Positions 1-63,539 of a stretch of 64,000 nucleotides of DNA are shown here, one piece after another (the first letter of the stretch is position 1; every line of letters starts with the position of its first letter). The notes under the pieces are model-generated. The model saw nothing but the letters and a program-made list of their open reading frames with translations. It ran no database searches and had not been told where the DNA came from. The position numbers and the translations under genes were made by a program. The DNA comes from Octopus bimaculoides (Eukaryota). The stretch spans positions 5,432,562 through 5,496,561 of the forward strand of contig NC_068981.1 in the NCBI RefSeq assembly GCF_001194135.2, in the 5' to 3' direction.

Positions 1-354
1 ATGATGATGATGATCATCATCATCGTTTAACGTCCGCTTTCCATGCTAGCATGAGTTGGACGATTTGACTGAGGACTGGTGAAACCAGATGGCTACACCA
101 GGCTCCAATCTGATTTGGCAGAGTTTCTACAGCTGGATGCCCTTCCTAACGCCAACCACTCCAAGAGTGTAGTGGGTGCTTTTACGTGTCACCCGCACGA
201 GGCCAGTCAAGAGGTGCTGGCAACGGCCACGCTCGAAATGGTGTATTTTACATGCCACCTGCACAGGAGCCAGTCCAGCGGCACTGGCAACGACCTCGCT
301 CGAATGTCTTTCCACGTGCCAGTGGCACAAGTGCCAGGAAGGCGACGTTGGTAA
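1..354 (-). mobile_element. (ATG)n-tailed SINE-like repeat, abundant family in this window
   Basis: catcatcatcgtttaacgtccgctttccatgctagcat...ctggatgcccttcctaacgccaacc; near-identical copies at 31163 (same orientation) and at 46399 and 60555 (opposite orientation). Confidence 0.85.
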
Positions 355-1399: not shown

Positions 1400-1862
1400 A
1401 CTTATTTTACTGCCTATTTTGAACACTTTTATGTAAACTATCTAACACTTTTGTTACTGTATTTATTTTCAGATGTTCTGTGCTTCTTTCAATTACTTTA
1501 AATATAACAAAGAATTTAGTAAAATAACTTAGTTATTCAGCTAGTGTTAGGAACATAAATTGTGACTAAGGTTTGGTGGAAGATTTTAATTGAAAACTTA
1601 TAAAAACAAGACATTTATATTACAGAGCCAGAGCCGGTTTCAGCCAGGTTGGTATCGAAAGGGTTAAGAATTGTTTCTCTATTATATCTTTTAAATATAA
1701 CAAAGAATTTAGTAAAATAACTTAGTTATCATTCAGCTAGTGTTAGGAACATAAATTGTGACTAAGGTTTGGTGGAAGATTTTCATTCAGAACTTTTGAA
1801 AATAAGACAATTGTACTCAGAGCCAGAGGCAGTTTCAGGCGGGTTGGTAATGAAAGAGTTAG
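1400..1862. mobile_element. Two tandem partial copies of a piggyBac-like MITE (AAAGGG-TTAA end)
   Basis: About 170-bp direct duplication (about 1497-1667 and 1690-1862); the first ends ggtatcgaaagggTTAA. Confidence 0.55.
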
Positions 1863-3158
1863 ACTAATCCACTCCACCAAATCTGGTGACCAAATGAACT
1901 TAATTTCAGTCATTCTGTAACAACATTGTGGTCAAGAAACTTACTTCCCAACCATGTGGTTTTAGGTTCAGTCCCACTGCATGGCACCTTGGCTGAGTGT
2001 CTTCTGCTATAGCCTTGGGCCAACTAAAGCCTTGTGAGTGAATTTGGTCGACAGAAACTGAAAGAAGCCTATTGTATCTATGTGTGTGTGTATATATAGA
2101 TGTATATGATGATGGACTTTCCTGTTGTTAGAGGGTTTAACAATTTCTTACCGAACAACCACACAAATGATTTGTTTATAGCAATGATTAAATGTTTGTG
2201 TACACAAAAGCTTGCTCCCTCCATCATATGGACATTACCTGTACAGGTGCACCATGTGCCACAGGTCAGATGACGAAATGATCACAGAGCAAAATGAAAT
2301 GAAGTGCTTTGCTCAAGAACACAATGCAATGCCTGATCTGGGAATCAAACCCACGATCTCGTAGTTGTGAGTGTAACACCCTAACCACTGAGCCATGTAC
2401 CTTTATATGTGTGTGTGTGTTTGTCCACCACCACTATTTGACAACTGGTGTTGGTGTGTTTATATTCCCATGACTTAGCAGTTTGGCAAAAGAAACTGAT
2501 AGATTAAGTACCAGGCTTAAAAAGAAGTATTAGGCTCAATTCATTCAATGAAAATTTCTTGAAGGCGCTGCCCCAGCATGACCACAGTCTGATGACTGAA
2601 ATGAGCAAAAGATAAGTGTCTGATGTTGGTTTGAGGAATTAGCAGATAAAATACAAGCAGTGATATTTGGGAAGGTGTTGGAAGCGAATTCAACTGTTTA
2701 GAGACTGGTACTTCAACAACTGGAATGGTAAAGATATTTCCAACTCTAATAGGATACTTCTGGCAAGTTCTTTCTGTAACTGACATCTTCAAATATTGAA
2801 AAAAGCATATAACAACAATGATGGCACCACTTTCAGACCATTAAAAGACATGGCATTGACTTGTCTCGAAGAATAAAAAAAATTGTGTGGTTATTGTACA
2901 GCTGTGCTATATTTGGAATAGAGAAGATGAGGCATTAAGCAGCGATATTGAACAACATTAAGACTCTAAGTCTAATAGTTCCTCTTTCAAGATATTAACC
3001 CCTCTGGCCATATTCTTCAGAATCTGGTTTCATAGCAAATGAATGGTTTTTAATGACATCTCTTATAATTACTTTGGCGACAGAAGTAATTTCTGGTTTT
3101 CAGTTTGGTAAGAAGGCACTAGAATTTATTAATTTATTTTTCTTTCCTCATTATTCTT

Positions 3159-3193
<35 letters not shown>

Positions 3194-3306
3194 AAAAATT
3201 ACAAGACAGAAATTGTAACTTAAACATTTTTGTTACTATGTGCAGCAGTGATTTGAAATCAAATTGCTAGGTAACAGGTCATACATCACAAACGAACCAG
3301 AATAGT

Positions 3307-3410
3307 GTCACATGATTGGTCTATTAAGCAACCAATCAGCATCACACTATCATGTGACTCAATCTTCAAGTGTGCCCTATAAAAGGCTGTGTTTGGCAGT
3401 AATTAGTTGT
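3307..3410 (+). promoter_or_regulatory. Promoter-like module: E-box, inverted CCAAT, CCAAT, E-box, TATA box, Inr-like
   Basis: GTCACATGA (3307) and TCATGTGAC (3350); TGATTGGT (3313) and ACCAATCA (3331); TATAAAAG at 3378; ttAgtt about 27 nt downstream of the TATA. Confidence 0.45.
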
Positions 3411-4012
3411 AGAATAGCTGAGCAAAATACACTTCCATTGTTGCTAGAAACATTTCTACAGATTTCTTCAGGTTCTTAGACAATGTCTCGTAAATAACTT
3501 CTTTGAAAGCAGTTCAATTGTAAAAGACCAACACAGTTTATCTGGATGTGCGACAATAAAATCTTCTGTAAATGTTTGTAGGTGTTGTTCAGTTACTCTT
3601 TCAAATAACCAAGAAACATATTTCCATTCATCACCTCAATCAGTCACCACACAGACCAGACGAAGAACCATAAGCCACAACAACGGTAAAAAGGTTGTTG
3701 TATTTGTGGAATGATTAGGGAATCTTTAGTATTTAATTGAAACAAGTGTTATATTGGGTGTTTTTACAGTGATGTTGAAAGGGGACTTGTACCATACTAT
3801 GCTTCTGTTGTTAATGATTCTTCAATATAAGTAATGTTTTTGTTTTTTTCATGCTTCAGGTATTCACAGAATCAAGAAATATTTGCTTCAAGGCAGCAAA
3901 TTCTCAATGTAGATGCGAATCATTTTTTTTTTTGCCTTCTTTTTAATATCATTAGTAATACTAATAGGATGGCAAGATAGACGATGAATGTAACAGTTTT
4001 ATTTGGTTTGTA

Positions 4013-4530
4013 CGAGGGTGAGTCAAAAAGTAATGCCATTTTGTTTAGGACAGGTATAATTACCAACACAGGAACATGTATCATACATCAAAATGAAGCT
4101 GGTCCTTTGTGGATCACATCCCTACTTCTCAACATAGTCAGCGTTTCTCTCAATAGCAATGTTCCACCTTCGAATAAGAGCATGTATCCCTGCCCCGTAA
4201 AATTCTTTTGACTTCTTTGAGCCACTTCTTCACTACCTCCACACTCACCAGATTTAGCGCCTTCAGACTATCATCTCTTCGGCCCCATGAAAGAGGGTTT
4301 GAGAGGCAAACATTATTCCAGTGATGAGGAAGTGAAAACTATAGTGAAGGAGATATATGCTCTCATTTGAAGGTGGAACATTGCTATTGAGAGAAACGGT
4401 GACTATGTTGAGAAGTAGGGATGTGATCCACAGAGGACCAGCTTCATTTTGATGCATGATACATGTTCCTGTGTTGGTAATTATAAACAAAGTCCTAAAC
4501 AAAATGGCATTACTTTGTAACTTACCCTCA
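4013..4530. mobile_element. Non-autonomous mariner foldback element with TA target-site duplication
   Basis: TA-cgagggtgagtcaaaaagtaatgccattttgtttaggac ... gtcctaaacaaaatggcattactttgtaacttaccctca-TA; long inverted arms; internal PHSPDLAPSDYHLFGPMKEGLRGKHYSSDEEVK (4239 onward). Confidence 0.92.
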
Positions 4531-5480
4531 TAACATGCTTAACACATGGCACTAAGTTGAGAATTACATCAAGATAAACAGCAACAGTAATATATTAATT
4601 GATGAAATTACAATAATTCTATTTGTTTTGTTATTAATAGGCCATCATTACTGTAGACTCGTCATTTGATCAGTTGTAGTTCTTTCTTCGAATCAGACTA
4701 AACCATTAATCCCAGAATAATTCTCAGTGCCCATCCTAACATATCAAGTCAATCAGTCATCACCACAAACCAGCCAACAAAAACACACAACATATATGTC
4801 TGATAAAAGACACTGCTTTTGTTGCAGTTAATTTTAGAAATAACAAAGAATTTAGTAAAATAATCTTATCATTATCAAATTGATGTTTGGAACAAATTAC
4901 CATGAAATTTTGATTGCTATAAAAGAGGGAACTTGTATAATTTAACCAGGGGTGGGTATTAAGAGTTGCAAAAATATAGAAATTTATCTTTGAATATCTT
5001 ACTAATATAATTTCGATTTTAGTAACAAGCCCTCTTTAGATGAATGGAATCTGCCAGACATCAAAAACTAAAAGGAAAATTGAATTTCAAGATTCCAGAT
5101 TTACATTGGTGAAAAGATGTCTTGGCAAATTAAGTTGAAATTTCAATCTTGGAATGGTATTTCTTCTAGTAACTGAAAACAATTAGAAAGTAAAAAGTTA
5201 CTAGACTATATTTATAATCAAATACAGATAGAAGTGACCATTCCAAAGTTTACTCAATACCGTTTTGGAAATGTGATCAGCGTCAACTCCCAAAAAACTC
5301 GACATGAATAAATTTAGGAAAATCACTGAAAATGAAACAAGGCTTGGGAAAGAATCGGCCAAAAATTCAAACCAAAATTAAGAACAATAATTATGTGAAA
5401 TGTTTTAATATTTTTATGTATTTCACATCATTTTGTAGCTTTGAATATTAATACGATCGTTTATTATTATAATTATTATT

Positions 5481-5900
5481 AAGGCAGCTAGCGGGCAGAA
5501 TTGTTACGGCGCCGGACAAAATGCTTAGCAGCATTTCTTCCGGTTTTACGTTTTGAGTTCATATGCCGTCGATGTTGACTTAGCCCTTTATCCTTACGGA
5601 GTCGATAAAATAAGCACCATTTGGGAACAGGGATTGATGTCAATCGACTTAGCATTCTCTTCCAAAAATTTCAGACCTTCTGTTGATAATAAGGATTATT
5701 AAAGCGGCGAATTGGCAGAATAGTCAGCGCGTCGAACAAAATGTTTGGGAGCAATTCCGTGGCGTCTTTATGTCCCGAGTTCAAACATCTCTGAGGTGAA
5801 CTTTGCCTTTCATCCTTTCGGGGTCGATAACATAAGTATTAATCAAGTACGGACGTCGATGGTATCGATTTCCCTAAAAACTCCTGTCTCCTGGCTTTGT
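5481..5900 (+). mobile_element. Two tandem copies of a tRNA-derived SINE (ggcggcgagctggcagaa...gagttcaaa...ctttgcctttcatcctttcggggtcgata family)
   Basis: Same family as 58611-58839 and the minus-strand fragments at about 1102-1225 and about 29150-29280; A-box/B-box-like head. Confidence 0.7.
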
Positions 5901-7304
5901 GCTTAAATTATATATATCCCTTCCGAAAAAGAAAAAAAAACCCAATTTTATTACAAAATCCCATTTTTTTCCACATAAAAAAACTTAATCCATCTTTCTA
6001 AACAGATTTTCCATTGTGTTCAGGTCCTTTTTATAATCAATGTCGTAATTCATAAATTATATTCTTTCAAAAACATAACGAAGAATTTGAATCTCATTAA
6101 AAACCCCAAAGTGACACAAAACATAATTCCTTACCATTCAAAATTATAAATTGACAACTAACTTATTGTGTTAAATATATTAATTAAGATGTTTATGTAG
6201 AAGTTAATTACGCAACAGAGCTTTAATTTAGGAAAAATATGAACTTTGAAAAAAAATCTGCATGCTGACTTGAAGAGGCAACATTTTGGTTGGAGTGCCA
6301 ATCTAACTTTCTCAAGCCCACCATTATCACCCCCTACCATTTTCAAATCCTTACAAATGTCGTTAAAACCCGATAGCAGTCAGGTACCAGGAGATTCTCT
6401 CTCCCAGCTTCACCAAAACTTACACTACATCAATTAACAGGGAGATTTAAAAAAAAAAACTTTCATTATATTTCATAGTTGGACTTTGTTCACTTTGCAA
6501 TGATGGTAAAACATTAAACATGACGTTAATTCTTTTAAGGAACTAAAAGAAATGAGACACGAAAAAAGGCCAGAGGGAGTTAAGTTTGTCCCCATCTTGT
6601 CTCATAAAATATTTCCTACATTTAAAACACGAAACGACGAAGCTCATTGTAATTGGGTGTCATTAGAAGGGAACAAAATAAAACTATATTCTCATTAACA
6701 TTGCAGTTTAAATAAATTAGATGAAACTAATTAATTAACCAAACAGGACTAGATTAACTTTTTTTTTTTGAAAGTTAGTGGAGTAAATTGCCTCATTCCC
6801 CCCCCCTTCTCACCTCATTCTGTAATAAATAAGGAACTTAATATCATCGTAGCTGAATAAAAGTATTTCCTTTTAAATGTTGGCTGGATCGTCTGTCTTA
6901 GAACTAAAAATAAAAAGAAATATTAAAAAAAANNNNNNNNNNTGTAATATTATAAGAAACGAAGATAAAAAAAATAGTACTGCCATGTTAGTGAAACAAT
7001 TAGAGAAATAGATGTGATATATATTTCTCTCTCTACACAGATTAATATATGAATGGCTAGAAGTAAATGTAAGGCAGCAGTGAGTATTGTATTAACGCTA
7101 AATAAATATCTCTCTCTCTTTATATATATTGGGAAGTCATTATGTGTGGCGGCGGCAGTTAAGAGTGCAATGATGTATTCTTACACCCGAGAGAACCAAC
7201 ACACTCTCCCACATATTGGAACAGCTCGACTAACTAAAACCAAGACAATCCTCGGTAACATTCGAAAGTAACATCGGTTAAATCCGTGAAAGATTTAAAA
7301 GCGA

Positions 7305-7341
7305 CCAATGGCGAAGCAGTTAAATAATGAGACAGTCCAAT
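7305..7341 (+). promoter_or_regulatory. Tandem CCAAT boxes (7305-7309, 7337-7341), 32 bp apart, in the PPP4R1 proximal promoter
   Basis: gaCCAATgg and gtCCAATcg within a locally CpG-containing, repeat-free region just upstream of the ATG; spacing is typical of tandem NF-Y sites. Confidence 0.45.
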
Positions 7342-7378
7342 CGAAACGCAGCTTGCATACCTCGTGGTTTCCTACAAC

Positions 7379-7385
7379 ATGGCGG
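7379..7385 (+). CDS. PPP4R1: PPP4R1 coding exon 1 (ATG GCG G)
   Basis: caacATGGCGG|gtgag: good start context and strong donor; joins exon 2 to give MADINYY, like the MAD start of PP4R1. Confidence 0.85.
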
Positions 7386-10300
7386 GTGAGGCGTCTTCTA
7401 AAGCAGACTTTGTTGCTCTAATTTGAAGTTTTGCGCCAATTTTAATGCTCTCCCATTTTATTTCAGACATCAACTATTATCGGGTTGTATTGGAAGATAC
7501 TTCGGAAAGCAGTAAGTGGTTGACTTAGCTTTAAACTTTGCTTGCTTTCGTTGGCCGTGTGTCCGTTGGCCATGTACCAAAGAGTAGAAGCTCCTCCTCG
7601 TCGTTTAACCAACGGACTCCACTTGCAGCCTTGATCACCCAGCACCATTCTATCCTCACTCTTTTCTTTCACCGTTAAAAACCTTTCTACCATTGTCGCC
7701 CTACATGTTATTGTTGTTATTATTGTTTATTCACAAACCAAAAACCAGTCAGCTAGTCGTTATTAACCGTGGGTGTCACTCATTTAACTTCCACCTCTGT
7801 CCTTAAAAAAAAAAAGAGAAAAAAGACTGCTTCTTCCTTTCGGACCAAGTACAATCGTACTAAGCAAAGAGGGCATGGGATATCTCTCTCTCTCTCTCAT
7901 GGCTCACAATTGATAACACTTTTAATGTTGTCTCACAACACCTAACAACATCCTTTGCTGACATGTTTAAAAAGCCAAAGCTCCTTTTTATAATATATAT
8001 CTCTTTCGAAGCGTCCATCCATCCCTCACACACACACACACACTAATATTTATTATTTCCTTTCATTTGTCTCTCAAATATTCCCCCCCTCCATGCTACT
8101 CTCTCTCACGTTTATTTATTTCTTTTTAATTGTATCTTATCTTAAAAATGCTTCACAAATCAATGTACTTTTTTTTCTTTTTTAAAAAAAAACCCTCTCC
8201 ATGTTTTGCCCCCCCCCTCTCTGTCTCTCTTCCATAAGCTACAAAAACATCTGTAAATTGTTGTCAATCCCTAAAAACAACCATTTCCCAGGAAGAAACA
8301 ACACAGATTATTTATATACGTGAATATTAGACAAAAAAATAAACCCCAAAAGTTGACAGATCCCTCTTTTTAGGACCGTAATTAAAATGCTTGCTTTACC
8401 GAAAAATATTCGGTTCGTGTGTGAGTCTGGGATTCAAAAATTTCCTTGTAATTCCCGTCAACGGAATGAAACGAGTGAATAATTATTAAAATAGCAATAG
8501 TATTTGTCCTGACATTGTTGTCTGTTGGTCAGTTCTCGTGATGGTACCTTTTTTTTTTAACGACTTCTTGTTCTTGTAAAAACCACCAACTAAACATCAC
8601 GCATCAACATCTTTTATTTTCTTGTTTTAGTTTTCTCACAAGAACAAGCTTTGCTGGTTTTCCATCTTTACAAATCGGAGAGAATCATTCATGATATGGT
8701 CACTATATTACTTATATATATAGAATAACCACACATACATATTGTTATATACACACATATCGTGCATGTAGATTGTCAGTAATGAGTAACGTGAAACTGA
8801 CACGATTTAAAAATATGCTTCAGCCTCATATATATATGTGTGTATATGTATATATATATACATACATACAGATCACACACACTCTGTTTTGAATATTTGC
8901 CCTCTCCCGTTTGTAAACACATTCTCCAATTTATATCCTGATTAATTGTAAATGCAATGTTACTGATGTATGTAGTTGGTAAATATTTCATTGACCTCTG
9001 CCCATGTGTAGTATATACAAACATATATACGTGCGTGTGTATGTATATATATATATATATATATAGTGTGTGTGTGTGTGTGTATTTCAGTGTTAAAATC
9101 TCTATTCCAAAGATAGAACTTTGTTTACATGTTAATTGATAAATAGAGGAATTCTGCAAGGTCTCTCTCTTTCTCCCCTTATCTATAAATATATATATTT
9201 TATATATCTCTCAACGAAGCCCTTCTCTTCTCTATGGCTCATAACTCCGAGTTCCTACCCTAAACACGGCTTAATTTTCGTTTCCCTCTCGCTGCAATAA
9301 TCATCAGCCACACACAACAAACGTCAGTTAGGTGCTTCTTGTATTCAATCCCTTTCCTTCTCAGTTCAAATGTGTGAACCCACTTTACTGATTTCACTGA
9401 GGCAGGGTACCTTACATACCGTGTACTATTAGAAATATTTCGTTAGGGGGATTTTCTTTTCTTAATTTTCGATTATCTTCATGTCAGCCTTTTAGTTTTT
9501 ATTTTCTTAAATGAAAACCTAATAATTTCTCTTATATTATTTTCTCTCTATCATGTGACCAGGGTGTTTCCTCTCGACCTTTTGAACTTAGCGCTTTTTA
9601 CCAATGTTCCCGCGTCTTCCTTTTTTTCCCCCCCTTGTGGTAACTTTGTAAAACTCACCCCTTTTCACGTCTCACAATCTGCCATTCATCACCAAACTCC
9701 CTAATGCTCTTAGTTTTTTTTTCTCTCTCACGGATTATTTGCTCTCTTAATTTTTTTTTTTGTCTCCTCCACCTCGTGTTTTATTTAAAAGCATTCGCTA
9801 ATTTTGTATATACAACTTGTATTTTCTCGACATTTCCACAAATCATTTTTAAAAACTATTTTTTTGGATATTATCGGTTCAGTTTAAATATTTAGGTTTT
9901 AAAAAGCACTTGAGCGGTGGTGGTGGTGGTAGGGGCGCAACTGTTTTATGAATGACAGTAAGTGTTATTGCTATAATTCCGTTTATATTTTAAAACATCT
10001 CCTATCTGTGTCTGTAAAATCTATTTAATATAATTGTTTATTGCTTATTTTTCTTTTCAATCGCATACGGTCTTGCAATCTCACATCAATCACATTTATT
10101 TGAATATATATTCGCATATATTTTAGCTACGTAATTGTGCGGGACTGTTCTTTTGTCTTATTTCAAAATTTCTACATTAACTCGGTTCTTTGTATCCACC
10201 ATTCTCTCTCTCTGCTTGCCTCTTTCTTGCTTCATCCATGGTGCTTACCGCCAAAAACTCGCACCTCATTCAATAATTGGCAACTCTGTTTTTTTTTTTT

Positions 10301-13300: not shown

Positions 13301-16300
13301 TTGCAAATTTGTAGCTGGTTGTACAAATAAGTCGACAGCATTTTATTCTATTCTATTCAGTTAATTCAATGTGATTCACCTGGTTTGGTTAAAATAGGCT
13401 TGGGTCAGTGGTTCTTGACCATTTATCTATCTCTGGACCTCTGATTCCTATTTTGGTCAGTTGGACAATCATGACCAATGTTTAAAATATTTTTTATAAT
13501 TGTTAGACATTGCATCAAACAATGAAAAATATTTTGTCTTGTAGAAGTCTAACCAGTTTATTGCAGATAAATTGCAACTGATACCTATATGGACCCTCAG
13601 GGTCCATATATGTGGGCCCTGGTGGGAAAGCTCTGGGTTGGAATTTATTAGCGGACGCGAATGTCTTGTTTCAAGTATCATTGAGGTGAGAGGTTTATGC
13701 AAGACAGACCTAACTCTTGGAAACGATCCATCTTCACAAAGAAGTTATGGAATTTGTTGTATTCACCATATCTATTTGTGAGAATATTTTTCAGGGCAAA
13801 ATGAACTCCATTTTGTAGTCATGAGTAATTTGACAGGTTTTGAATTAATCATGCCCCACCTTGTAGCATAATGACAGACAATATTTGACTTGGATAAGGC
13901 TACATGAAATACCAAAGGATGAAAATATTTTTGTACCAATTTGTTTCAGTCACTAGGGAGTGTCCATGGGCCACTGCCTTAAATAATTTTTGGGTTGGAA
14001 GAATTAACTCCTGTATTTGGTTTTCTTGTTTTAAATGACTAGTACTTTCCTGTTGGTCTCTTCTGTTGAACTACTAAATTATAGACATAAACACAACAAT
14101 ACCAGTTATCAAGCTGTGATGGTGGGAGGCAAACAAACGTTTGTATGTGTGTTATATGTATATAAATGAAACTCATGTGGACCCTGGTTGAAAAGCACAG
14201 GATTAGGATTTACTAGGGAATACGAATGCCTTGTTTAAAGTGTCACTGAGGGTTCTTTCACTTTCTATCAAATCCACTCACAAGGCTTTGGTCAGCCCAA
14301 GCCTTATAGTAGAAGACACTTGCCTAGATGCTATGCAGTGGGACTGAACCCAGAACCATATGGTTGGGAAGCAAATTTCTGAACACACCGCCACACCTTA
14401 TGTCAATTTTATTGGCATCAATGTAAGCATGAGTGTGGTGCATGTGGTCAAGAAGTTTGCTTCCGAAATGCAGGGTTTTAAGTTCAGTCCACCTACATGA
14501 CACTTTGGGTAAGCATCTTCTGATATAGCCCTGGGCTGACTAAAGCCTTGTCAGTGGATTTGATCGACAGAAAAAAGTAGCCTGTTGTGTCTGTGTGTCA
14601 TCTTCACGTTGTCTAACTGCTGTAAAGGTGTGTCACTGTCCTAATTAGTTCCATTCATTTCCAACATTGTGCAAATAAGTCTGTCCATGAAGGAAATGTT
14701 GAGTTGTTTGGAAACGGGTGAGGGTTGGCAACCGGTGGCACGACTGACTGTAGAAAATCTGCTGATCCATGCAAACATAAAAATGGGAAATCTACGAAAT
14801 TGGGATCCTCTTTGTGAAGTGATGCTAAGGTCTGAACAGTGTATCTAGGCTCAAATATTTGTAGGTGCAGGAGTGTTGTAAGAAGTTTGTTTCCCAACCA
14901 CATGGTTCTGGGTTCAGTCCCACAGCATGGCACCTTGGGCAAGTGTTTTCTATAGCCTCAAGCCGACCAAATTGCTGTTGGTTTGTGTATGTCCTTGTAA
15001 ATCAGCAGTTTTCCATTGTGATTACTGTTTGATCTGATTCCAGGACGATCCAGTTAGATTTTTAATTATGTGCACAGTCATTGCTCTAGCAACTGAATGT
15101 CAATCTGTTCTTATTGGTTGCATAAATACTGCTTTGGTCAGAACTATAAAGTTGCTTTTAATTCCTTGGCCTCTTGCTCAAGATTAGTATGTAGTTTCTG
15201 TAGGCGTGGCTGTGTAGCAAGACATTTTCTTCTCAACCATATGGTTCCTAGTTCAGTCTCACTGTGTTCCAACTTGGGCAAGTGTCTTTTACTATAGCTT
15301 CAGGTTGAATAACACCTTTTTGAGTGGATGTGTGTGTCCTTGTCTGTTTGCCCCCCCCCCCCCATCCCAACCCCACACAGTGCTGGTGGATTGGCCAAGG
15401 ATAAGTACCTGGCTTAAGCTGCTTGGGTCAATTCATTTGGCTAAAGATTCAAGGCACTCTGCCCTAGCATGGCCAGTCTAATGANNNNNNNNNNNNNNNN
15501 NNNNNNNNNNNNNNNNNNNNNNNNNNNNNNNNNNNNNNNNNNNNNNNNNNNNNNNNNNNNNNNNNNNNNNNNNNNNNNNNNNNNNNNNNNNNNNNNNNNN
15601 NNNNNNNNNNNNNNNNNNNNNNNNNNNNNNNNNNNNNNNNNNNNNNNNNNNNNNNNNNNNNNNNNNNNNNNNNNNNNNNNNNNNNNNNNNNNNNNNNNNN
15701 NNNNNNNNNNNNNNNNNNNNNNNNNNNNNNNNNNNNNNNNNNNNNNNNNNNNNNNNNNNNNNNNNNNNNNNNNNNNNNNNNNNNNNNNNNNNNNNNNNNN
15801 NNNNNNNNNNNNNNNNNNNNNNNNNNNNNNNNNNNNNNNNNNNNNNNNNNNNNNNNNNNNNNNNNNNNNNNNNNNNNNNNNNNNNNNNNNNNNNNNNNNN
15901 NNNNNNNNNNNNNNNNNNNNNNNNNNNNNNNNNNNNNNNNNNNNNNNNNNNNNNNNNNNNNNNNNNNNNNNNNNNNNNNNNNNNNNNNNNNNNNNNNNNN
16001 NNNNNNNNAATTTCTGTGCCCTTTCTCGCTAACATTTTCCTTGAATCCTAGGTTTTAACTGGGTGAAAGCTGTAAAGAAATCTCTTGTGTCCAGCTTTCA
16101 TGGATGACAAGCCATGAAAGTGGTCTGGTGGTATCTAAGGACTGAGTTCTCTTTTTTATATCAGGCAGTCGTAACTCAATGGCTGTGGAACAACCTTTTG
16201 GGTCATAGAATTGATGTTCAGAAATGCTTGCTCACTGCCACCTGAGATACATTGTTGGCCCTTTTCAGTGATTTCTCAAGCCCACCCCTTTTTTTTTTTT

Positions 16301-19300: not shown

Positions 19301-21873
19301 AAATATTTTGGGTGATCGTGTGTCCTTTAGCATGTTAATGTTTTATTTCAGTCGATGTTGAAGACCAGGTGGTTCAAGTATTGTTGGACCTTGCTTGTCC
19401 AACAAGTCCAGATGAATTTCGCACAGAAGCTGCTGCCGTAAGTGGACACTTTCAACTACCTCTTACTTTACGCAACATGCACTAACTTACTACTCCCTCC
19501 CTGTTCTAGTTTTGCCCTTTTTTCAGTTTCCAGCCTCGTCCCTTTTTTATTTTTTCCACTATAACAATTGTGTTTGGCTTGAAAGACACGGGTAGTGAGA
19601 TGTTATTTTATAAACTTCTTACTACCCTGTCTTTCGAGCGGATCACTTTACATTCTTGCTGCTGATGAAATATGAATTGAAACTGCAAGTAAAGCGAAAC
19701 TAGTTTGTCTAATTATGCCTAATTATGTAAAAAAAAAGAGAAGGAAAAAAGAAATTTTAGTTGAATAACTACAGTTACATTCCGCCCGTCCCTCTCCGTT
19801 ATTCCTTTCAGTGCAACAGAGCTTGATGTAGAAACAGGTTACAAAGGCATCAATGCTGGATGTCATAGTAAATCTATGGGGCCTATCACAGCCAGCTTTG
19901 ATGAGCCTTGTCTCCTGCCAGTCATCACTGCTAGTTTGGTGTGCCCCTTACCCCCCACTTGGATATTTGCAGATTTTGAGTTTTCAGAATAGAAGAAAAG
20001 AATCTTTGTTTGTTTGTTTTTGTTTGTCTGCCATGTCTGTTACTGACCAAGTGGTTGTGAATGTGCTGCTAAATTGGACTTTCATATCACAGCCTGCTTG
20101 GATCAGTAACATACTTGGTGCTTCAACGCCTTGGAATGGACAACAGCCATTTTTTAACACCTTTCTAACATTGCCTATTCTCTCCTAACCTTGTTACAGC
20201 TCATCAAAGGACTGTGATATATAGATATTTGAACGTCTCACAGCCAGCTTTGATGAGCTGGCTGTAGGTTGCTTCCCTGCTCCGCTAGCTTTACACCTTT
20301 TTTTTTTTTTTTTTTTTNNNNNNNNNNGCAATAGCTTTCTTCAGCTTTTTTTTTTTTTTGTTTTTTTTTAAACCAATATCCTTAGTGTTGTGACTGTGTT
20401 GTATCTCATCAAAGAGCTGGGATATGCTAACAAAATGACGTATCACAGCTAGCTTTGATGAGCTAGGGCACTGTTGAAAGCATCACAAATCCACATGTTG
20501 CTTGAGATGTTCCTTTTTTTTTTGTTTTTTTATATACCTATTAGTTGTGTAAGGTGTTTTTGTATTTAATTTACGTGACTTTTTTTTTTTTCGTATTTTT
20601 GTGTGAGGTGTTTGGCAAGAATAAATGGTTAGATTCATTGATTTTGTTTCCCTCCTATTGGCATTTCTGAATTGGACATAGTTCTCTGTGTGTATCTATT
20701 GGCCATGTTGCATCTCATCAAATAACTGGGATATGCGGTTATAATGACGTATCACAGCTAGCTTTGATGAGCTTCAACTTGGTTGTTCTCAGCAACCTGG
20801 TTCACCCTCCTGGATATTTTCTCTCTCTCTCTCCTTTTTCCCGACTTTATAATCCCTTTCCATGTTTTTCTTGATGCTTTTGTATCTGGCACCCTGAATT
20901 CTAGTGGCTTAGTTGTAACTCATCAAATAACTGGGATATGCTGCTATTAGGACATATCACAGCTAGCTTTGATGAGCTGGGACTTGGTTTATTTTGGCAC
21001 ACTTCTCACCATTTTAGTTGATGGGGGAAAATTTAATGTTCTTGCTGGATTATAAGATGTTGTTTATAATTAATAAATGTTGTTGACTGTGTTTTGATGT
21101 TCCGACTCTATTGTAACTCATTAAAGAGCTGGGATATGCTGTCTTTCTGACATATCACAGCTAGCTTTGATGAGCTACACTTGGGTTATTTCACCTCCAA
21201 TTTACTTGTTTACTTTGTCTTAGCGATTTAATATTCCTCATTTTTCTCATTTAGAAGTCATTTAGTTTCATAGACCAATGTATTTTCAGAAATATTCTTC
21301 AAATAAAAAAAATTAAATGTTGGGGAACTGAAATTATTTTAAAAAAAATTGTTTTAGTTATTGTTTGACGTAATGTTTTCAATTGTCCTATGTTCTCTTG
21401 GTATAATCCCAGGACCACTTAAATCATTGATCATCCCCAAAAGCGGTGCCTTCTGTAGCTGTAGGATTCCCTTTTTCAGACAATGACTTGTTGGAGATAA
21501 CTCAGCCAGATAGCCCCCTCCGTTCTTGTGTTGTCGGGGGCTCTGCTCTCTGCTTTAAGTCACCAAAGTGGTGGTGATGTGTTCTCACTAAACCATATCA
21601 CAGCCAGCTTTGATGAGCTCAAACATGAGACCATACAGCGATGGCTGGGATCTCCTTTCATCAAAGTGGCTGTCATATGCTTTCCAATCCTTCATATCAC
21701 AGCCTGCTTTGATGAGAGGAAGCCCTTCACTGCAAATTCAGATGCCACCATTGTTGTCACTAGCAGCAGCAGCAGCAGCGGCAACAAAACACTTGCTCTC
21801 CCCATTTTTTGTTCCTTTTTATGTATAAAATGTTTTGGAATTACCAGTTTTGGCTTTAAAGTACCAATGTTTT

Positions 21874-21905
<32 letters not shown>

Positions 21906-24900
21906 CTCCAACCAGTTTCACATTAATATAAGAGCAGTGGATCTCAACCAGGCTCCATTTACAATTTCACTAAAATTTATCTGCAATAAATTGCTTATGC
22001 TTCTTTTTTTTTTTTAATTCTAAATATTCAATAAAAAATATTTTAAAAAATTGAATGAAAGTCTACTCGAAATCGAAATCAAAGAAGTAAAAAGAAAATG
22101 GTTGAGGACTGCTGATGTAGAGGTTTGCATTAGGTGCCAGCAGATTTACATAGTTTGTCTTGTTGGAAATGATGTCGATCTATTTATTAAAAAAAAAAAT
22201 TTTTTTTTCCACTTAGATCACTTTAACCCTTTTGTTACCATATTTCTATTGAAATNNNNNNNNNNNNNNNNNNNNNNNNNNNNNNNNNNNNNNNNNNNNN
22301 NNNNNNNNNNNNNNNNNNNNNNNNNNNNNNNNNNNNNNNNNNNNNNNNNNNNNNNNNNNNNNNNNNNNNNNNNNNNNNNNNNNNNNNNNNNNNNNNNNNN
22401 NNNNNNNNNNNNNNNNNNNNNNNNNNNNNNNNNNNNNNNNNNNNNNNNNNNNNNNNNNNNNNNNNNNNNNNNNNNNNNNNNNNNNNNNNNNNNNNNNNNN
22501 NNNNNNNNNNNNNNNNNNNNNNNNNNNNNNNNNNNNNNNNNNNNNNNNNNNNNNNNNNNNNNNNNNNNNNNNNNNNNNNNNNNNNNNNNNNTTTTTTTTT
22601 TTTTTTTTTTTTTTTTTCTTTTTGAGATGAGAAATTTGTATTGGTTTGTATCAAATTTCTCTTGGGGACAGAAAATTTTAGCTTTCATCTGTCAAATACT
22701 CTCCTGAAATAGTATATGGTGTTGCCTTGGTGGGAAATAACTTCTGTAGATGGGTAGCAGTTTAGCTTTAACTGGAATATTTGTTGAAGGGAATAAGTTG
22801 AAATTGGTGCATCTTCAAGAACATGTGTAAAATTAGCAATACTGATTGCAAAATATTCTTTGGTACTTTAAAGCAGTAAATACCATCCTCATGCAGTGGA
22901 AATGTGTTTGTAAAATGATTAGTTTGGTTCTAAACCATTCTTTGAGTTGTGTAATGGATGTTTTCTTCCCAAAACTGTTAAAAACTATTTCCATGGTTAA
23001 AATGAGTTTTTACCATCGGTTGTCATCGTTGATGCTTCGCTCTTAAAATTTCCAATAAAATTTCAACGAGCCGTACTCCTTCCTCAGAAGGGCTACTTCT
23101 TCACCCATTGTACTCCGATTTTGTTTCTGTATTTTCTTTTCTATTGTTTGCTCATTATAAAAGATGATAGCAATGATCATCTGTGGATTAAAGCCTATTT
23201 CAGTGCAGTTGATAATCCATTTTCTGCCCAAACACCATGTTAGAATTGGCGGCAAAACTATTTTCCAGTTAGCAAGCTGTTGATTTTTGTGAGTTTCTTC
23301 TGATTTTCTTTGTTTTATGTTTGACAAGGTTTAGTAGTAGTAGCAGCAGTAGTAGTTGTGGTGGAATAGCATAAAGTATTAGTTTCATATCTAAATATTA
23401 AAGGGCAATGAAGTTCCATACTAAATTATGTGATCTAGATACGCATAACAAATATAAATTTTTTTTTATCAGTGAAGTACAATAATCTAGTATTTTTTTT
23501 TTTTTAACTTAAAACCATTTAAAAGAATTTAATTAACTTAGTTTCCTTCTGATGAATTGTTACTAATTAATCTTAATGATCTCGACCAGAATAATAGTAA
23601 ACCCATTCTGGTCTCTGGATTATAAGAAATATAAGTATTACAGCAGAGAATACTGTCTTGTCAAAGTTTTTTTGTTATGTTTCTGTGTTGTTCAAGAATT
23701 TTTCTAAATGCTCACATGTATTTCTGGATTTCTTTCAACAGTTGATGTGCAAAATGGCGCCTTTGCTAGGAAGAGAAATGACTGAACGTTTGTTTCTTGC
23801 CCGTTTTACTCAAATGTGTTCAGACCCTCTATTCCATGTGAGAAGGGTAAGCTATGGGCTCGTCAAACAGCAATATTTTTATTTCCCTTTCCTCCAATAG
23901 ATCGGAAGACAATTTTATATGTAAATGGTTTTCTAGAAATTCACCTAAACTTCAAGGTACATTTGATACCAGATAGCTGTTGTAAATAGCATTGAATTGG
24001 TTCTCAGCAAGGGTCAGTATAAGACTTAGGCATTAAAATTTACCTGTAATATATTGAGGATGCTTTTATAATACGCAAATATTTTTTTCTACAACTGAGT
24101 GAAATCATAGTTGTAGCTGGTGGCACGTAAAAAGCACTGTTCGAGTGTTGGGTCTCATGGAGGCAGTAACGGGTGAACAAGACCTTTGGTGATATACCAT
24201 GCTTGTTTGGACCTGTTGAGCCAAGCGAGACCAGCTGATGCCAGTGTCAGGTCATTGGCACCCGTGCTTGTAGAAAAACACCCGCTACACTCTCGGTGTG
24301 GTTGGTGTTAGGAAGGGCATCCAGGTGTAAAAACCTTGTCGAATTAAATTGGGACCTGGCGCAGTCTCTCTGACATAGCAGTTTTCAATCAAACCGTCCA
24401 ACCCATGCCAGCATGGAAAGTGATTATCTTGACAGTTTCTAATAATAATTATAAAATATAGGATTTTTGTTTTAAGTGTGAACTGGCTATGAAGTCTAGT
24501 AGGGTTAAATAGGAATTGGAGGGATCGCTGGTATAAAGGAATGATTTGGTGACAGACAAAATTAACTGAGATATACTGACTTTCAGTTTATTTTCAGAAT
24601 AAGGATTTGGTAGTGTTGTTAAGCTACTGTTTGGAATGTAAATTTAGTTGAAATCTTAATGGAGAGCTGCTAGGCCTTTAAACTGGTCATATTTGACCCA
24701 AACACTACCATTATTGTATGGTGAAACTGGCTTTATCTGGTCTCTCACACCTAATCTAATGTGTCATTCTACAAATAATCACATGGGAATTTAAGCACTA
24801 CAAGGTAATGAATGATTAATTGAACACCATGTGAATAAATTAGCATTACTTGACATGAAGTAATTTAAGTGTCAAAGGGTTAAAATAGGACATTTGTATC

Positions 24901-39000: not shown

Positions 39001-42000
39001 TAGCCCCAGGCTAATGGAAGTGTTGTGAGTGGTTTTGGTTGAGAGAAACTGAATGAAGCCCATCGCGTGTGTATGTGTGTCATCGTCATTTAACACTTGT
39101 TTTCCATGCCGACATGGGTTGAACTCTTTGGCAAGTTGGAGAGCTGCACCAGGCTCCAATTGTCTGTTTTGGTGGGGTTCTTACAACTGGATGCCCTTCT
39201 TAATGCCAACCACTTTACAGTGTACTCAGTGCTTTTTATATGGCACCAGTGCTTCTTCATGTGGCACCAGCATGGGCTCATGGCTTCTGGTAGCAATTAT
39301 AAAATGTGGGAAACCAGTGAATGTAAGAAATAATTGTAGCAACTGCTACCGACCAATTGAGAATTTTTGCAGTCAGTGCTAATCTTGATGCATTCATCTT
39401 GCCATTGTTGGTGCTCATTTTGTAATGTGTGTGTGTGTATTCCTGTTTCAATAGTCTCAAGAATTTCTCATCAGGACTTAACTAATTTAATTTTCTCTTA
39501 GTATACTTCATCAAGTGTGGTAACAGTCTCATGAAGAATTTAGTAAAATATCTTTGTTGGGATTAAACCGTTTCTTTTGTATGCAAGCTGAAATTTAGCC
39601 CTATGACAACAGGTTTTTTTTTATCAGGCAACCAGGTTGCACTGACGGTGATCATCTCGGCCAAGATCAGCAATTAGTGCACAACAACGGTTTGGTGCAT
39701 ATTTACATCAACCGCTTAAATGCATCCACTGTTTATTTAAGTAAACTGTCATCACTGAGAGGACTGTAAATTCCATGAAGGACCAGAAGAATTTGCTAGG
39801 AAGTCATAATGGAAATTGTGGTGCATCCACCAAAACTGCTGCTTTTATACTATTATGGTGATGAAGTCTTGAACTGAGTTGGAAATAATTACATGAAGAA
39901 TCTAACAAAACCTTGGTGGCCTCTATTATCGATTCTGTGAGTGATAGTGGGTATTTATATCAATGGGTACAAAACTGCAGCAGATAGGGCCGTGTATATT
40001 CAAATCATCTGATTCAAAGCGAGTATACAGTGCTTGTAAATTTACATCAACCAATGTTATGGGGTGAATGGAAGATTTTTAATTGCGATCATTGAAACTC
40101 TTTAGCGTTCAGATTAATATAAAGCTTATTTAATCATTGTTTTCAATTAGTTATGCTTTGTGTTGTAGCTTTGAGATTTTAATAATGCATTTGTTCAGTA
40201 TTAGAATGACATTGTAGGGTAGGTGTGAGAGGTTGGATCTGGCTTGTTTGAACCTAAAACAAGTAAAATACTCGGCTGGTTTAAATGCCAAAGGGTGAAT
40301 TCAGGTAGTTTATCTCCCAGAACTGGCGCTAGTCTTGGGCAGGCTTCTATCAAGGCTGCCAACTGCAGTGTTATTCTCATTATTGTTATCATTTAATGTC
40401 TACTTTCCATGTTGGCATGGGTGGATCGGTTTGACAGTAGCTGGCCGGGCAGAAGCCTGCACCAGACATCTAACTGTTTTGGTAGGATTTTCACAGCTGA
40501 ATGCCCTTCCAAACACTAACCACTCAGCAGAGTGGACTCAGTGCTTTTTATGTGGCACAAGCACAGGTGAGGTCAGTTTTGGCAAGGTTTTTACAGCTGG
40601 ATGCCCTTCCAAACATCAACCACTTTACAGTGTGGACTGAGTGCTTTTTTTAAGTGGCTCCTGCCCTGACCTTGCAAGACAAAAACATCTTTTGAGAAGG
40701 GAGGGGGCATTGGAAGAGGTGATCTTGTGTCAAAATGAACTTTCATCAGAATGTTGTGCTACAATATTATTAAGCATTTGTTTTTAGAGCTTTAATTTGA
40801 CTAAATATTTGTTTCAGGAACCTTACTGATGCTGAAAAAGAAGCTAAAATTTGTTGTGATAGAGCGAATGAAACAAAACAGCCGTCGCCTTCTGTGGAAG
40901 TGGATGATGAACCAAAAGTAGAAACTGACAACAGTTCTTCTCAGACTTCAGAATATTCCCAGTCCTGTGATAAAGCATCTGTTGAAATCTGTGATAAACC
41001 TTCAAGTCCTGCTAATATTGTAGATATGCAGATAGATGCTGCAGAGCCAACAGCTGAAGCCTCTGAGTTAACTGAAATCAGGCTTTATACGGAAGAGATT
41101 TCTATCGAGGAGAAGAAGGCCAAGTCAATCCTGTCCACAATAGCTGCATTAAAGAGTGATGCCACTTGTACGAGCGAAGTAGATCAGAGAGAGTTGAGTG
41201 CAGAAGCTACAAGCAGTGAACAACAACAACAACAACAACAACCAGAACCTAGTTCAGAAATGAATATTCCTCCTCCTCCTCCTCCGCCTCCTCCTCAGAC
41301 ATCTGATCCAACGTCTTCCGAGGTCTTCAATGCGTTTCAGTATTGGAGGACTCCATTGCCAGATATAGCAAACCTAGAGTTAGATTTGGCTGCCAGTAAT
41401 AATAGTAAAGATGATAGTAATTCTGCAGATAACTTGTATGCTTCGAAACTAACACATCAAGACCAAGATAGCAATTCAACTTGGTGGTCTGGGGACCTGC
41501 TAAGCAGTTTAGCTAATATGGATCTTAGTAAATTTTGGCAAGTTCCTTCAGACCTCCAATGGGTGAACTCTGCTGCTGAGGTTGAACGTAGTGCTGCTCG
41601 AATTATTCACACGGCCAGTATCAGCACTGTGTACAATCCATCCGAAACTGTTTCCAACATTGGTAGCACCCATTTGTTTGGTCATCACGTGAACGAGTCT
41701 GCAAAAGCCATGGGTGATTGTAAGTATATTTCTTTTTCACTTTAGCAATGTATTTGCTTGTTTTCTAAAACCTTGTCCCCTTACGTCAGACCTCCAGGCA
41801 CCATTCCGATGTTTGCTGTAAAGATTCTGTTGCACCATTCCATATTGCCACTCACCACCTGATTTCTCTTTTACAACCTTCACATAACACAACCCACTGA
41901 GGGCCCATTGACTAATGGTTAGTGCGTTTCTTATACAGTTGCAAGGTTATAGTTTCAATTCCCAAGCTAGCAGTACATTTCACATTGCTCCAGTCCACTC

Positions 42001-63095: not shown

Positions 63096-63144
63096 GTAAG
63101 GTTCTTTATTCACCTATTCATTACTTTTCCATTGAAATTGTCTC

Positions 63145-63147
<3 letters not shown>

Positions 63148-63209
<62 letters not shown>

Positions 63210-63254
63210 ATATATATATATATGTGTATATATATATATATGTGTGTGTGTGTA
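63148..63254. repeat. (TA)n/(TG)n compound microsatellite
   Basis: Direct inspection. Confidence 0.98.
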
Positions 63255-63539
63255 TCATTGTTGTCGATTAATTCCTGCTTTCCATGCTGGCATGGGTTGG
63301 ACCTTTTGATTGAGGACTGGTAAGCCAGAAGGCTGCACCAGGTTCAATCTGATCTGGCAAAGTTTCTACAGCTCCAAGAGTGTATTGGGTGCTTTTACGT
63401 GCCACTGGCACGAGGGCCAGTCAGGCGGTTCTGGCAACGACCACGCTCGAAAGGCATTTTTCACGTGCCGGTAAGGTGACACTGGCAACAATCATGCTTG
63501 GATGTGCTTTTAGCGTGCCACTTAACAAGCAAAGTTTAT

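What the first reader, a model, noticed from the sequence alone, without database searches (positions are those of the whole stretch)
20402..21179. Four tandem mir-2 paralogues (D-G) share a position-10 C-to-U variant and a distinctive 5p arm
Seen: all four 3p arms are identical, UAUCACAGCUAGCUUUGAUGAGC (U at position 10, where A and H have C). Their 5p arms are nearly identical (CUCAU(C/U)AAA(GAG/UAA)CUGGGAUAUG) and keep the same G-A mismatch opposite the seed. Loops (ctaacaaaatgacg, cggttataatgacg, ctgctattaggaca, ctgtctttctgaca) and spacers have diverged; mature starts are 309, 205 and 198 nt apart. Inference: an older local tandem amplification with purifying selection on both arms. The conserved 5p arm may be a functional co-mature miRNA, or the mismatch may tune Dicer cleavage or strand choice.
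Basis: partly seen in the sequence, partly recalled or inferred. Interest (0 to 1): 0.7.

Follow-up and report, generated by a model that had tools for sequence, protein, structure and literature searches.

The report
Four tandem mir-2 microRNA gene copies
These are four real, old tandem copies of a mir-2 microRNA gene inside the well-known mir-71/mir-2 cluster; they are kept intact by selection, and this is an ordinary family expansion rather than a new kind of element.

Summary
Four hairpins (20402-21179, + strand) carry the identical 3p arm UAUCACAGCUAGCUUUGAUGAGC at 20441, 20750, 20955 and 21153. All four reach Rfam's mir-2 gathering score.

They lie inside a canonical cluster: mir-71 plus nine mir-2 hairpins, 19574-21721. 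The cluster sits in an intron of PPP4R1, and the same intron hosts it in at least six unrelated comparator contigs.

Among the four copies, variable columns are 0/23 in the 3p arm, 3/22 in the 5p arm, 10/14 in the loop and 56/60 in the flanks. Flank identity is no better than shuffled sequence. The copies are therefore old duplicates under purifying selection, not recent copies or misassembly.

U at position 10 pairs with a compensating A in the 5p arm. The G·A mismatch opposite position 5 is found only in this quartet among 39 hairpins examined.

The U10 mature sequence is not new: an oyster paper lists it as cgi-miR-2b-1. About eight other lophotrochozoan clusters lack it.

Published Octopus vulgaris data annotate several Mir-2 "orphan" paralogues. 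One (o24) uses a 5p strand starting UCAUCAAA, as in copies D, E and F. A functional 5p strand is therefore plausible but unproven here.

Overall this is a known family and a known type of expansion, of low to moderate interest.

The parts
19352..19437 (+). PPP4R1 exon immediately upstream of the cluster (acceptor AG at 19350-51, donor GTAAGT from 19438); encodes ...VDVEDQVVQVLLDLACPTSPDEFRTEAAA
   Evidence: Read from the sequence. tblastn finds the same exon 200-450 nt upstream of mir-71 in L001, L004, L005, L006, L010 and L012. The gene is identified as PPP4R1.
19574..19643 (+). mir-71 hairpin, the first gene of the cluster
   Evidence: Rfam RF00832, 66.5 bits against a gathering score of 50. 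MFE -45.4 kcal/mol, z = -10.8.
19843..19910 (+). mir-2 copy A (3p UAUCACAGCCAGCUUUGAUGAGC; conserved 'A-type' 5p arm)
   Evidence: Rfam mir-2, 39.6 bits, below the gathering score. Orthologous A-type copies hold the same first position in L004, L005 and L010.
20040..20111 (+). mir-2 copy B (3p UAUCACAGCCUGCUUGGAUCAGU, identical to lgi/cgi-miR-2d)
   Evidence: Rfam 45.4 bits. The identical mature sequence is listed in PMC4941716, Table 2. The same type holds the second position in the comparators.
20197..20262 (+). mir-2 copy C, with altered 3p start UCUCACAGCC; shares the one-base-shorter 5p arm with D-G
   Evidence: Rfam 48.2 bits; pairing map.
20319..20328 (.). 10-N assembly gap inside a poly-T tract, between copies C and D
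   Evidence: Seen.
20402..20467 (+). mir-2 copy D (5p 20405-20426, loop 20427-20440, 3p 20441-20463, U10)
   Evidence: Rfam 50.6 bits. MFE -34.2 kcal/mol, z = -5.3. Pairing map.
20711..20776 (+). mir-2 copy E (5p 20714-20735 with UAA, loop 20736-20749, 3p 20750-20772, U10)
   Evidence: Rfam 49.3 bits. MFE -23.4 kcal/mol, z = -2.8. Pairing map.
20916..20981 (+). mir-2 copy F (5p 20919-20940 identical to E, loop 20941-20954, 3p 20955-20977, U10)
   Evidence: Rfam 48.4 bits. MFE -24.7 kcal/mol, z = -3.0. Pairing map.
21114..21179 (+). mir-2 copy G (5p 21117-21138 with U at position 6, loop 21139-21152, 3p 21153-21175, U10)
   Evidence: Rfam 46.2 bits. MFE -29.6 kcal/mol, z = -4.5. Pairing map.
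21556..21622 (+). mir-2 copy H (3p UAUCACAGCCAGCUUUGAUGAGC)
   Evidence: Rfam 58.3 bits.
21654..21721 (+). mir-2 copy I (3p UAUCACAGCCUGCUUUGAUGAGA)
   Evidence: Rfam 55.9 bits. MFE -38.9 kcal/mol, z = -7.5.

Best explanation
D-G are four paralogous mir-2 family precursor hairpins. They arose by local tandem duplication of one ancestral hairpin that already carried U at 3p position 10. They sit inside the conserved protostome mir-71/mir-2 polycistron, which here lies in a PPP4R1 intron on the same strand as the host gene.

Inferred mechanism: the cluster is transcribed with, or within, the host pre-mRNA. Drosha cuts each roughly 35-bp stem (lower stem plus duplex) and Dicer removes the 14-nt loop. 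All four hairpins then release the same 23-nt 3p guide with the family seed AUCACAG. The quartet therefore mainly multiplies the dose of one miR-2 isoform that shares its seed targets with copies A, B, H and I.

The C-to-U change at position 10 lies outside the seed. It is structurally compensated by an A in the 5p arm. The G·A mismatch opposite position 5 and the 2-nt central bulge are inherited features of the ancestral hairpin, of the kind that helps strand unwinding and favours 3p loading.

Purifying selection on the 3p sequence and on hairpin pairing has kept the arms while loops and spacers randomised. The 5p strand, starting UCAUCAAA in D, E and F, may also be loaded to some extent.
For: Shown by tools:
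- Four exact 3p copies, none expected by chance.
- All four reach the Rfam mir-2 gathering score on the + strand, with weaker antisense scores.
- Hairpin folds have z-scores of -2.8 to -5.3.
- Linked mir-71 and five further mir-2 hairpins lie within 2.2 kb.
- Variable columns: 3p 0/23, 5p 3/22, loop 10/14, flanks 56/60. Fisher test, arms against loop p = 3.6e-6; arms against flanks p = 5e-21.
- Flank identity is 0.53-0.54 against 0.50-0.52 for shuffles.
- A lower stem of about 10 bp is retained in all four copies, with two double-compensated pairs.
- U10 pairs with a 5p A in all four, and the position-5 mismatch is unique to D-G among 39 hairpins, so it is a shared derived character.
- Comparator clusters share the order mir-71, A-type, B-type, followed by a variable number of copies. 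This matches the birth-and-death tandem evolution described by Marco et al. 2012 (PMC3384581).
- The cluster lies in the same PPP4R1 intron in six comparators.

From established knowledge: Drosha/Dicer processing, seed-based targeting, and the role of seed and central mismatches in unwinding and loading.
Against: No small-RNA data could be examined, so expression, cleavage sites and arm ratios are inferred. E and F fold less stably (-23 to -25 kcal/mol, z about -3) because of the UAA variant. F also lacks a CNNC motif at the canonical +16 to +18 position, so not all four copies need be processed equally well. Informative sites conflict: some group (D,E)(F,G) and others group (D,G)(E,F). This means simple duplication plus selection is not the whole history; some short gene conversion or parallel change occurred. 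The organism could not be identified.
Confidence: 0.85

Rival explanations
1. The hairpins are bifunctional. The 5p arm (UCAUCAAA..., seed CAUCAAA) is an independently selected guide strand. On this view the quartet, its near-symmetric duplex ends and its G·A mismatch are maintained to deliver both strands.
For: The 5p arms of D-G are 0.85-1.00 identical. The 37 other within-cluster paralogue pairs with near-identical 3p arms have a mean of 0.65 and a maximum of 0.84. Both strands start with U, and the terminal 4-bp stabilities are almost equal at -0.2 and -0.5 kcal/mol. Published Octopus vulgaris data list Ovu-Mir-2-o24_5p with 1,450-4,428 reads of coverage. They use TTTGATGA, the site for a miRNA starting UCAUCAAA, as its response element, with many sites conserved between two octopus species.
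Against: The 5p seed is the complement of the family-wide conserved 3p tail UUUGAUGA, so it is conserved automatically. Copies C and I also give UCAUCAAA, so o24 cannot be mapped to D-G. Copy G has a seed change (CAUUAAA) that keeps pairing as U·G, which is what a pairing-only constraint predicts. The greater similarity of the 5p arms may simply reflect a younger duplication age than that of the ancient paralogues, since D-G loops are also somewhat more alike. Marco et al. report that 5' arm changes in the family track hairpin structure.
Confidence: 0.3
2. The identity of the arms is maintained mainly by concerted evolution among neighbouring copies (gene conversion or unequal crossing-over), rather than by purifying selection on each copy.
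For: Informative sites conflict in the manner of a four-gamete test. The base before the 5p arm, loop column 8 and the last loop base group (D,E)(F,G). 5p positions 10 and 12 (GAG or UAA) and loop column 5 group (D,G)(E,F). E and F are adjacent and have identical 5p arms.
Against: Any conversion tract spanning both arms would also homogenise the 14-nt loop between them, yet 10 of 14 loop columns vary. The identical tracts are only 22-23 nt long, which is very short for conversion. The 3p arm is conserved across phyla without any possibility of conversion.
Confidence: 0.1
3. The four copies are recent duplicates or an assembly artefact, such as a repeat expanded during scaffolding.
For: The assembly has N gaps, including one at 20319-20328 next to copy D. 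Tandem microRNA pairs with identical pre-miRNA sequences are often misassemblies (bioRxiv 10.1101/2021.09.01.458616).
Against: The pre-miRNAs are not identical. Loops differ at 10 of 14 columns. Spacers have different lengths (309, 205 and 198 nt) and do not align better than shuffled sequence.
Confidence: 0.03

Closest known systems
mir-2 family (Rfam RF00047; MirGeneDB MIR-2) in the mir-71/mir-2 cluster of protostomes (Marco, Hooks and Griffiths-Jones 2012, PMC3384581)
   Same: The hairpin architecture, the 3p-arm mature strand with seed AUCACAG, same-strand linkage to mir-71, and copy number varying through tandem birth-and-death. Paralogues give near-identical mature products, and the 5p arms change in step with the structure.
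   Different: The cluster here has nine mir-2 hairpins, more than the two to six seen in the comparator contigs. Four of them carry U10 together with a compensating 5p A and a position-5 G·A mismatch.
cgi-miR-2b-1 (formerly cgi-miR-2b) of Crassostrea gigas, UAUCACAGCUAGCUUUGAUGAGCU (PMC4941716, Table 1)
   Same: The 24-nt mature sequence is identical, including U10 and the U that follows position 23 in all four copies here.
   Different: It is reported as a single mature species in oyster. Its precursor and copy number were not available, so whether U10 is homologous or convergent is unknown. A contig with oyster-like arms (L012) has no U10 copy among its five hairpins.
Ovu-Mir-2-o20-v1, -o21 and -o24 of Octopus vulgaris (MirGeneDB names used in Zolotarov et al. 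2022, PMC9699675, supplements)
   Same: There are several 'orphan' Mir-2 paralogues in a cephalopod. The o24 5p strand starts UCAUCAAA, as do the 5p arms of D, E and F. The o20-v1 start UCACAGCC would fit copy C.
   Different: The sequences are not in the held supplements and the window's species is unverified, so one-to-one identity could not be tested.
Drosophila mir-2a-1/mir-2a-2/mir-2b-2 intronic cluster (from my own knowledge, not tested here)
   Same: Tandem intronic mir-2 paralogues, two of which give the identical mature miR-2a. That sequence equals the 3p arm of copies A and H here.
   Different: The host gene is different, mir-71 has been lost in Drosophila, and there is no U10 isoform.

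Membership tests
mir-2 precursor family (Rfam RF00047) | Match to the covariance model at or above the curated gathering score (45.5 bits) | tested here: met
   D 50.6, E 49.3, F 48.4 and G 46.2 bits on the + strand.
mir-2 precursor family (Rfam RF00047) | Mature product on the 3p arm with the family seed AUCACAG at positions 2-8 | tested here: met
   UAUCACAGC... lies on the 3' arm of each hairpin. That this arm is the expressed one is inferred.
mir-2 precursor family (Rfam RF00047) | A stable hairpin of 60-70 nt with an extended lower stem suited to Drosha | tested here: met
   MFE from -23.4 to -34.2 kcal/mol, z from -2.8 to -5.3. The consensus structure has 29 pairs, including a lower stem of about 10 bp.
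mir-2 precursor family (Rfam RF00047) | Same-strand genomic linkage to mir-71 and other mir-2 genes (the ancestral protostome cluster) | tested here: met
   mir-71 at 19574-19643 and nine mir-2 hairpins up to 21721, all on the + strand. Comparators show the same layout.
mir-2 precursor family (Rfam RF00047) | Small-RNA reads with precise 5' ends and 2-nt offsets, as required by MirGeneDB's criteria for a bona fide microRNA | not testable with these tools
   No read data are available. There is only indirect literature support for octopus Mir-2 paralogues.
miR-2b-1 isoform (U10) as in Crassostrea gigas | Identical mature sequence UAUCACAGCUAGCUUUGAUGAGCU | tested here: met
   A literature string match in PMC4941716, Table 1. 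All four copies have T after position 23.
miR-2b-1 isoform (U10) as in Crassostrea gigas | Orthology of the locus, meaning a shared precursor with the 5p A opposite U10 and the position-5 mismatch | not testable with these tools
   The oyster precursor is not available. The U10 22-mer is absent from the metagenome and genome collections.
MirGeneDB Octopus Mir-2-o paralogues | Sequence identity to the annotated Ovu/Obi-Mir-2-o genes | not testable with these tools
   Only names, 8-mers and editing positions are held. No paper text carries the sequences. The species of the window was not identified.
Mirtron (splicing-defined intronic hairpin) | Hairpin ends coincide with the intron's splice sites | tested here: not met
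   The hairpins lie about 1-1.7 kb downstream of the donor site at 19438 and are separated by spacers. They have canonical lower stems.

The most novel reading that the evidence does not exclude
The U10 quartet is a lineage-specific, dual-strand microRNA module. Its amplified hairpins would have been reshaped (one-base-shorter 5p arm, G·A at position 5, iso-energetic ends, 5'-U on both strands) so that a second guide with seed CAUCAAA is co-delivered with miR-2. Copy number would set the dose of both strands. Copy G (CAUUAAA) and the E/F variant (UAA) would be early sub-functionalised versions.
Probability: 0.2. Interest if true: 0.45.

Novelty: already known. Interest (0 to 1): 0.22.

Why it matters
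It matters little beyond correct annotation. The quartet is a clean textbook example of how microRNA clusters grow by tandem duplication while selection freezes the arms and lets loops and spacers decay. It also shows a compensated substitution outside the seed (U10 with a 5p A).

If the 5p strand proved to be an independently selected guide, the locus would be a useful natural case of arm co-option within an ancient family. The 5p variants would tag individual copies, because the 3p reads from the four copies cannot be told apart.

The side observation may be of some use for synteny-based orthology of these very short genes: the whole mir-71/mir-2 cluster sits in the same PPP4R1 intron in many distant contigs.

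Tried and rejected
- Independent assemblies and species identity. Exact-ORF look-ups of two spurious ORFs overlapping the cluster found nothing on record. Protein searches with PPP4R1 exons gave at most 78% and at most 38% identity, so the organism could not be named. A mollusc is supported only by copy B being identical to lgi/cgi-miR-2d.
- Other occurrences of U10. Scans for the U10 arm found nothing in metagenome contigs or genome contigs. A genome-contig scan for the B-type arm also found nothing.
- Literature. Searches for MirGeneDB gene names and for a documented PPP4R1 and mir-71/mir-2 host-gene link returned nothing relevant. The octopus paper's held supplements contain names and 8-mers but no sequences, so Ovu-Mir-2-o24 could not be mapped to a specific copy.
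- L002 and L003 (PPP4R1 loci with long introns) had no cluster within reach.
- Rejected readings: misassembly or recent duplication, because loops and spacers have diverged; mirtrons, because the hairpins are not at splice sites; antisense genes, because - strand Rfam scores are 8-19 bits lower.
- RNAfold on copy C with its flanks gave an alternative fold. Within the hairpin alone it folds normally.

Full report
**Observation.** The sequence TATCACAGCTAGCTTTGATGAGC occurs exactly four times on the + strand, at 20441, 20750, 20955 and 21153. The spacings are 309, 205 and 198 nt, and shuffles give no match. Copies at 19884 and 21596 have C at position 10. The quoted 5p arms and the four 14-nt loops are all present as described.

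**What surrounds it.** Rfam places mir-71 at 19574-19643 (66.5 bits). It places mir-2 hairpins at 19843 (A), 20040 (B), 20197 (C), 20402 (D), 20711 (E), 20916 (F), 21114 (G), 21556 (H) and 21654 (I). All are on the + strand, and D-G all exceed the gathering score. Antisense scores are 8-19 bits lower. This is the canonical protostome mir-71/mir-2 cluster described by Marco et al. 2012. That paper attributes variation in copy number to tandem birth-and-death, and notes that 5' arm changes follow the hairpin structure.

**Host gene.** An exon with a GTAAGT donor ends at 19437, just upstream of mir-71. A downstream exon identifies the host gene as PPP4R1. Two PPP4R1 loci fetched through that exon carry mir-71 plus five or six mir-2 hairpins in the same orientation. 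A metagenome scan for the B-type arm gave eight more loci, L005-L012, two pairs of which duplicate each other. The short exon preceding mir-71 is recognisable directly upstream of mir-71 in six comparators. The cluster therefore occupies the same PPP4R1 intron across distant taxa.

**Age and selection.** Among D-G, variable columns are 0/23 in the 3p arm, 3/22 in the 5p arm, 10/14 in the loop and 56/60 in flanks kept in register. The Fisher test gives p = 3.6e-6 for arms against loop and p = 5e-21 for arms against flanks. Global identity of the 60-nt flanks is 0.53-0.54, against 0.50-0.52 for shuffled sequence. The multiple alignment shows conservation only in the hairpin and about 10 nt on either side. 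RNAalifold recovers a lower stem of about 10 bp in all four copies, and two of its pairs changed on both sides. This is the signature of old duplicates that are each maintained as a Drosha/Dicer substrate. It excludes recent duplication and misassembly; the latter typically gives identical pre-miRNAs.

**Anatomy of the quartet.** In all four hairpins the A at 3p position 5 faces a G. None of the other 35 hairpins examined (five in the window, 30 in the comparators) has its mismatch there, although single seed-region mismatches at positions 2, 4, 6, 7 or 8 are common. U10 pairs with an A in the 5p arm, whereas canonical copies pair C10 with G, so the substitution is compensated. D and G have a 2-nt bulge at positions 11-12. 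E and F, with UAA in place of GAG, have a mismatch at position 9 and a bulge at positions 12-13, and they fold 5-10 kcal/mol less stably. These shared derived characters show that D-G descend from a single U10 ancestor. Copy C shares the one-base-shorter 5p arm and is probably their nearest relative; this is an inference.

**A conflict in the history.** Informative sites disagree about how the four copies are related. Three sites group (D,E)(F,G): the base before the 5p arm, loop column 8 and the last loop base. Three others group (D,G)(E,F): 5p positions 10 and 12, and loop column 5. Some short conversion or parallel change therefore occurred. Conversion cannot be the main homogenising force, because the loop between the two arms has diverged.

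**Distribution of U10.** The exact mature sequence is listed for Crassostrea gigas as cgi-miR-2b, renamed miR-2b-1 (PMC4941716, Table 1). It is therefore neither new nor restricted to this lineage. It is also not general. None of about 30 mir-2 hairpins in about eight independent comparator clusters has T at position 10, and the 22-mer is absent from the metagenome and genome collections. Whether the oyster and window U10 copies are homologous remains open.

**The 5p question.** The 5p arms of D-G are 0.85-1.00 identical. The 37 other within-cluster pairs with near-identical 3p arms average 0.65 and reach at most 0.84. The two duplex ends are nearly iso-energetic (-0.2 and -0.5 kcal/mol), and both strands begin with U. 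Only the position-5 mismatch tips the choice toward 3p.

The supplements of Zolotarov et al. 2022 list Ovu-Mir-2-o24_5p with 1,450-4,428 reads of coverage. They use TTTGATGA as its response element. By their definition (A plus the complement of positions 2-8) this means a guide starting UCAUCAAA, which is exactly the 5p start of D, E and F. I checked that their editing positions are 0-based, using mir-71, mir-124 and mir-1.

Several points weaken this support. Copies C and I give the same 5p start, while G gives UCAUUAAA. This seed is also simply the complement of the family-wide 3p tail. The higher 5p similarity may partly reflect a younger age, since D-G loops are also somewhat more alike. 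A functional 5p strand is therefore plausible, at roughly 0.2-0.3 probability, but not shown.

**Processing motifs.** CNNC starts at +17 or +18 downstream of the 3p arm in D, E and G but not in F. A UG lies at -15 in D, E and F. This is suggestive only.

**Verdict.** The thing itself is an ordinary expansion of a well-known microRNA family in its well-known cluster. The mature isoform is already published, and cephalopod Mir-2 paralogues are already catalogued. Interest is low.

Noticed in passing
window 19352-21721; L001, L004, L005, L006, L010, L012: The whole mir-71/mir-2 cluster lies in the same PPP4R1 intron, directly after the exon ending ...RTEA(A/V)A, in the window and in six unrelated comparator contigs. 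Two literature searches found no mention of this host-gene link.
   Followed up: partly
window 20236-20258 (copy C): Copy C has C instead of A at 3p position 2 (UCUCACAGCC). This would change the seed, or shift the processed 5' end to UCACAGCC. The latter would fit the published Ovu-Mir-2-o20-v1 site GGCTGTGA. With its flanks, this copy also prefers an alternative fold.
   Followed up: partly
window 20405-21175 (D-G): Informative sites conflict in a four-gamete manner. The basal and loop-end bases group (D,E)(F,G), but the 5p GAG/UAA variant groups (D,G)(E,F). E and F are adjacent and have identical 5p arms. This implies a very short conversion tract or parallel change.
   Followed up: partly
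window 20319-20328, 22257-22592, about 15490-16010, about 59700-60080: There are runs of N (scaffold gaps). The 10-N gap lies in a poly-T tract between copies C and D, so further hairpins could be hidden there.
   Followed up: no
window 79-354, 39053-39382, 40335-40640, 52719-53042, 61293-61583, 62943-63323 (both strands): Spurious ORFs recur with the same peptide motifs (LDALPN.NHSK..., CFPC(W/R)HG...). This points to a dispersed interspersed repeat family, possibly SINE-like, scattered through the PPP4R1 introns.
   Followed up: no
window 40894-41745: A large PPP4R1 exon (283-aa ORF) matches Pfam WRNPLPNID (PF15017) at 26.9 bits, essentially at threshold. It contains poly-Q and poly-P tracts. 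The homologous exon is seen in L003.
   Followed up: no
L012 (marine metagenome contig), - strand 4397-7476: This cluster has arms identical to the oyster sequences cgi-miR-2d and cgi-miR-2a-2 (…GAUGACA), but none of its five hairpins has U10. It probably comes from a bivalve or other mollusc.
   Followed up: no
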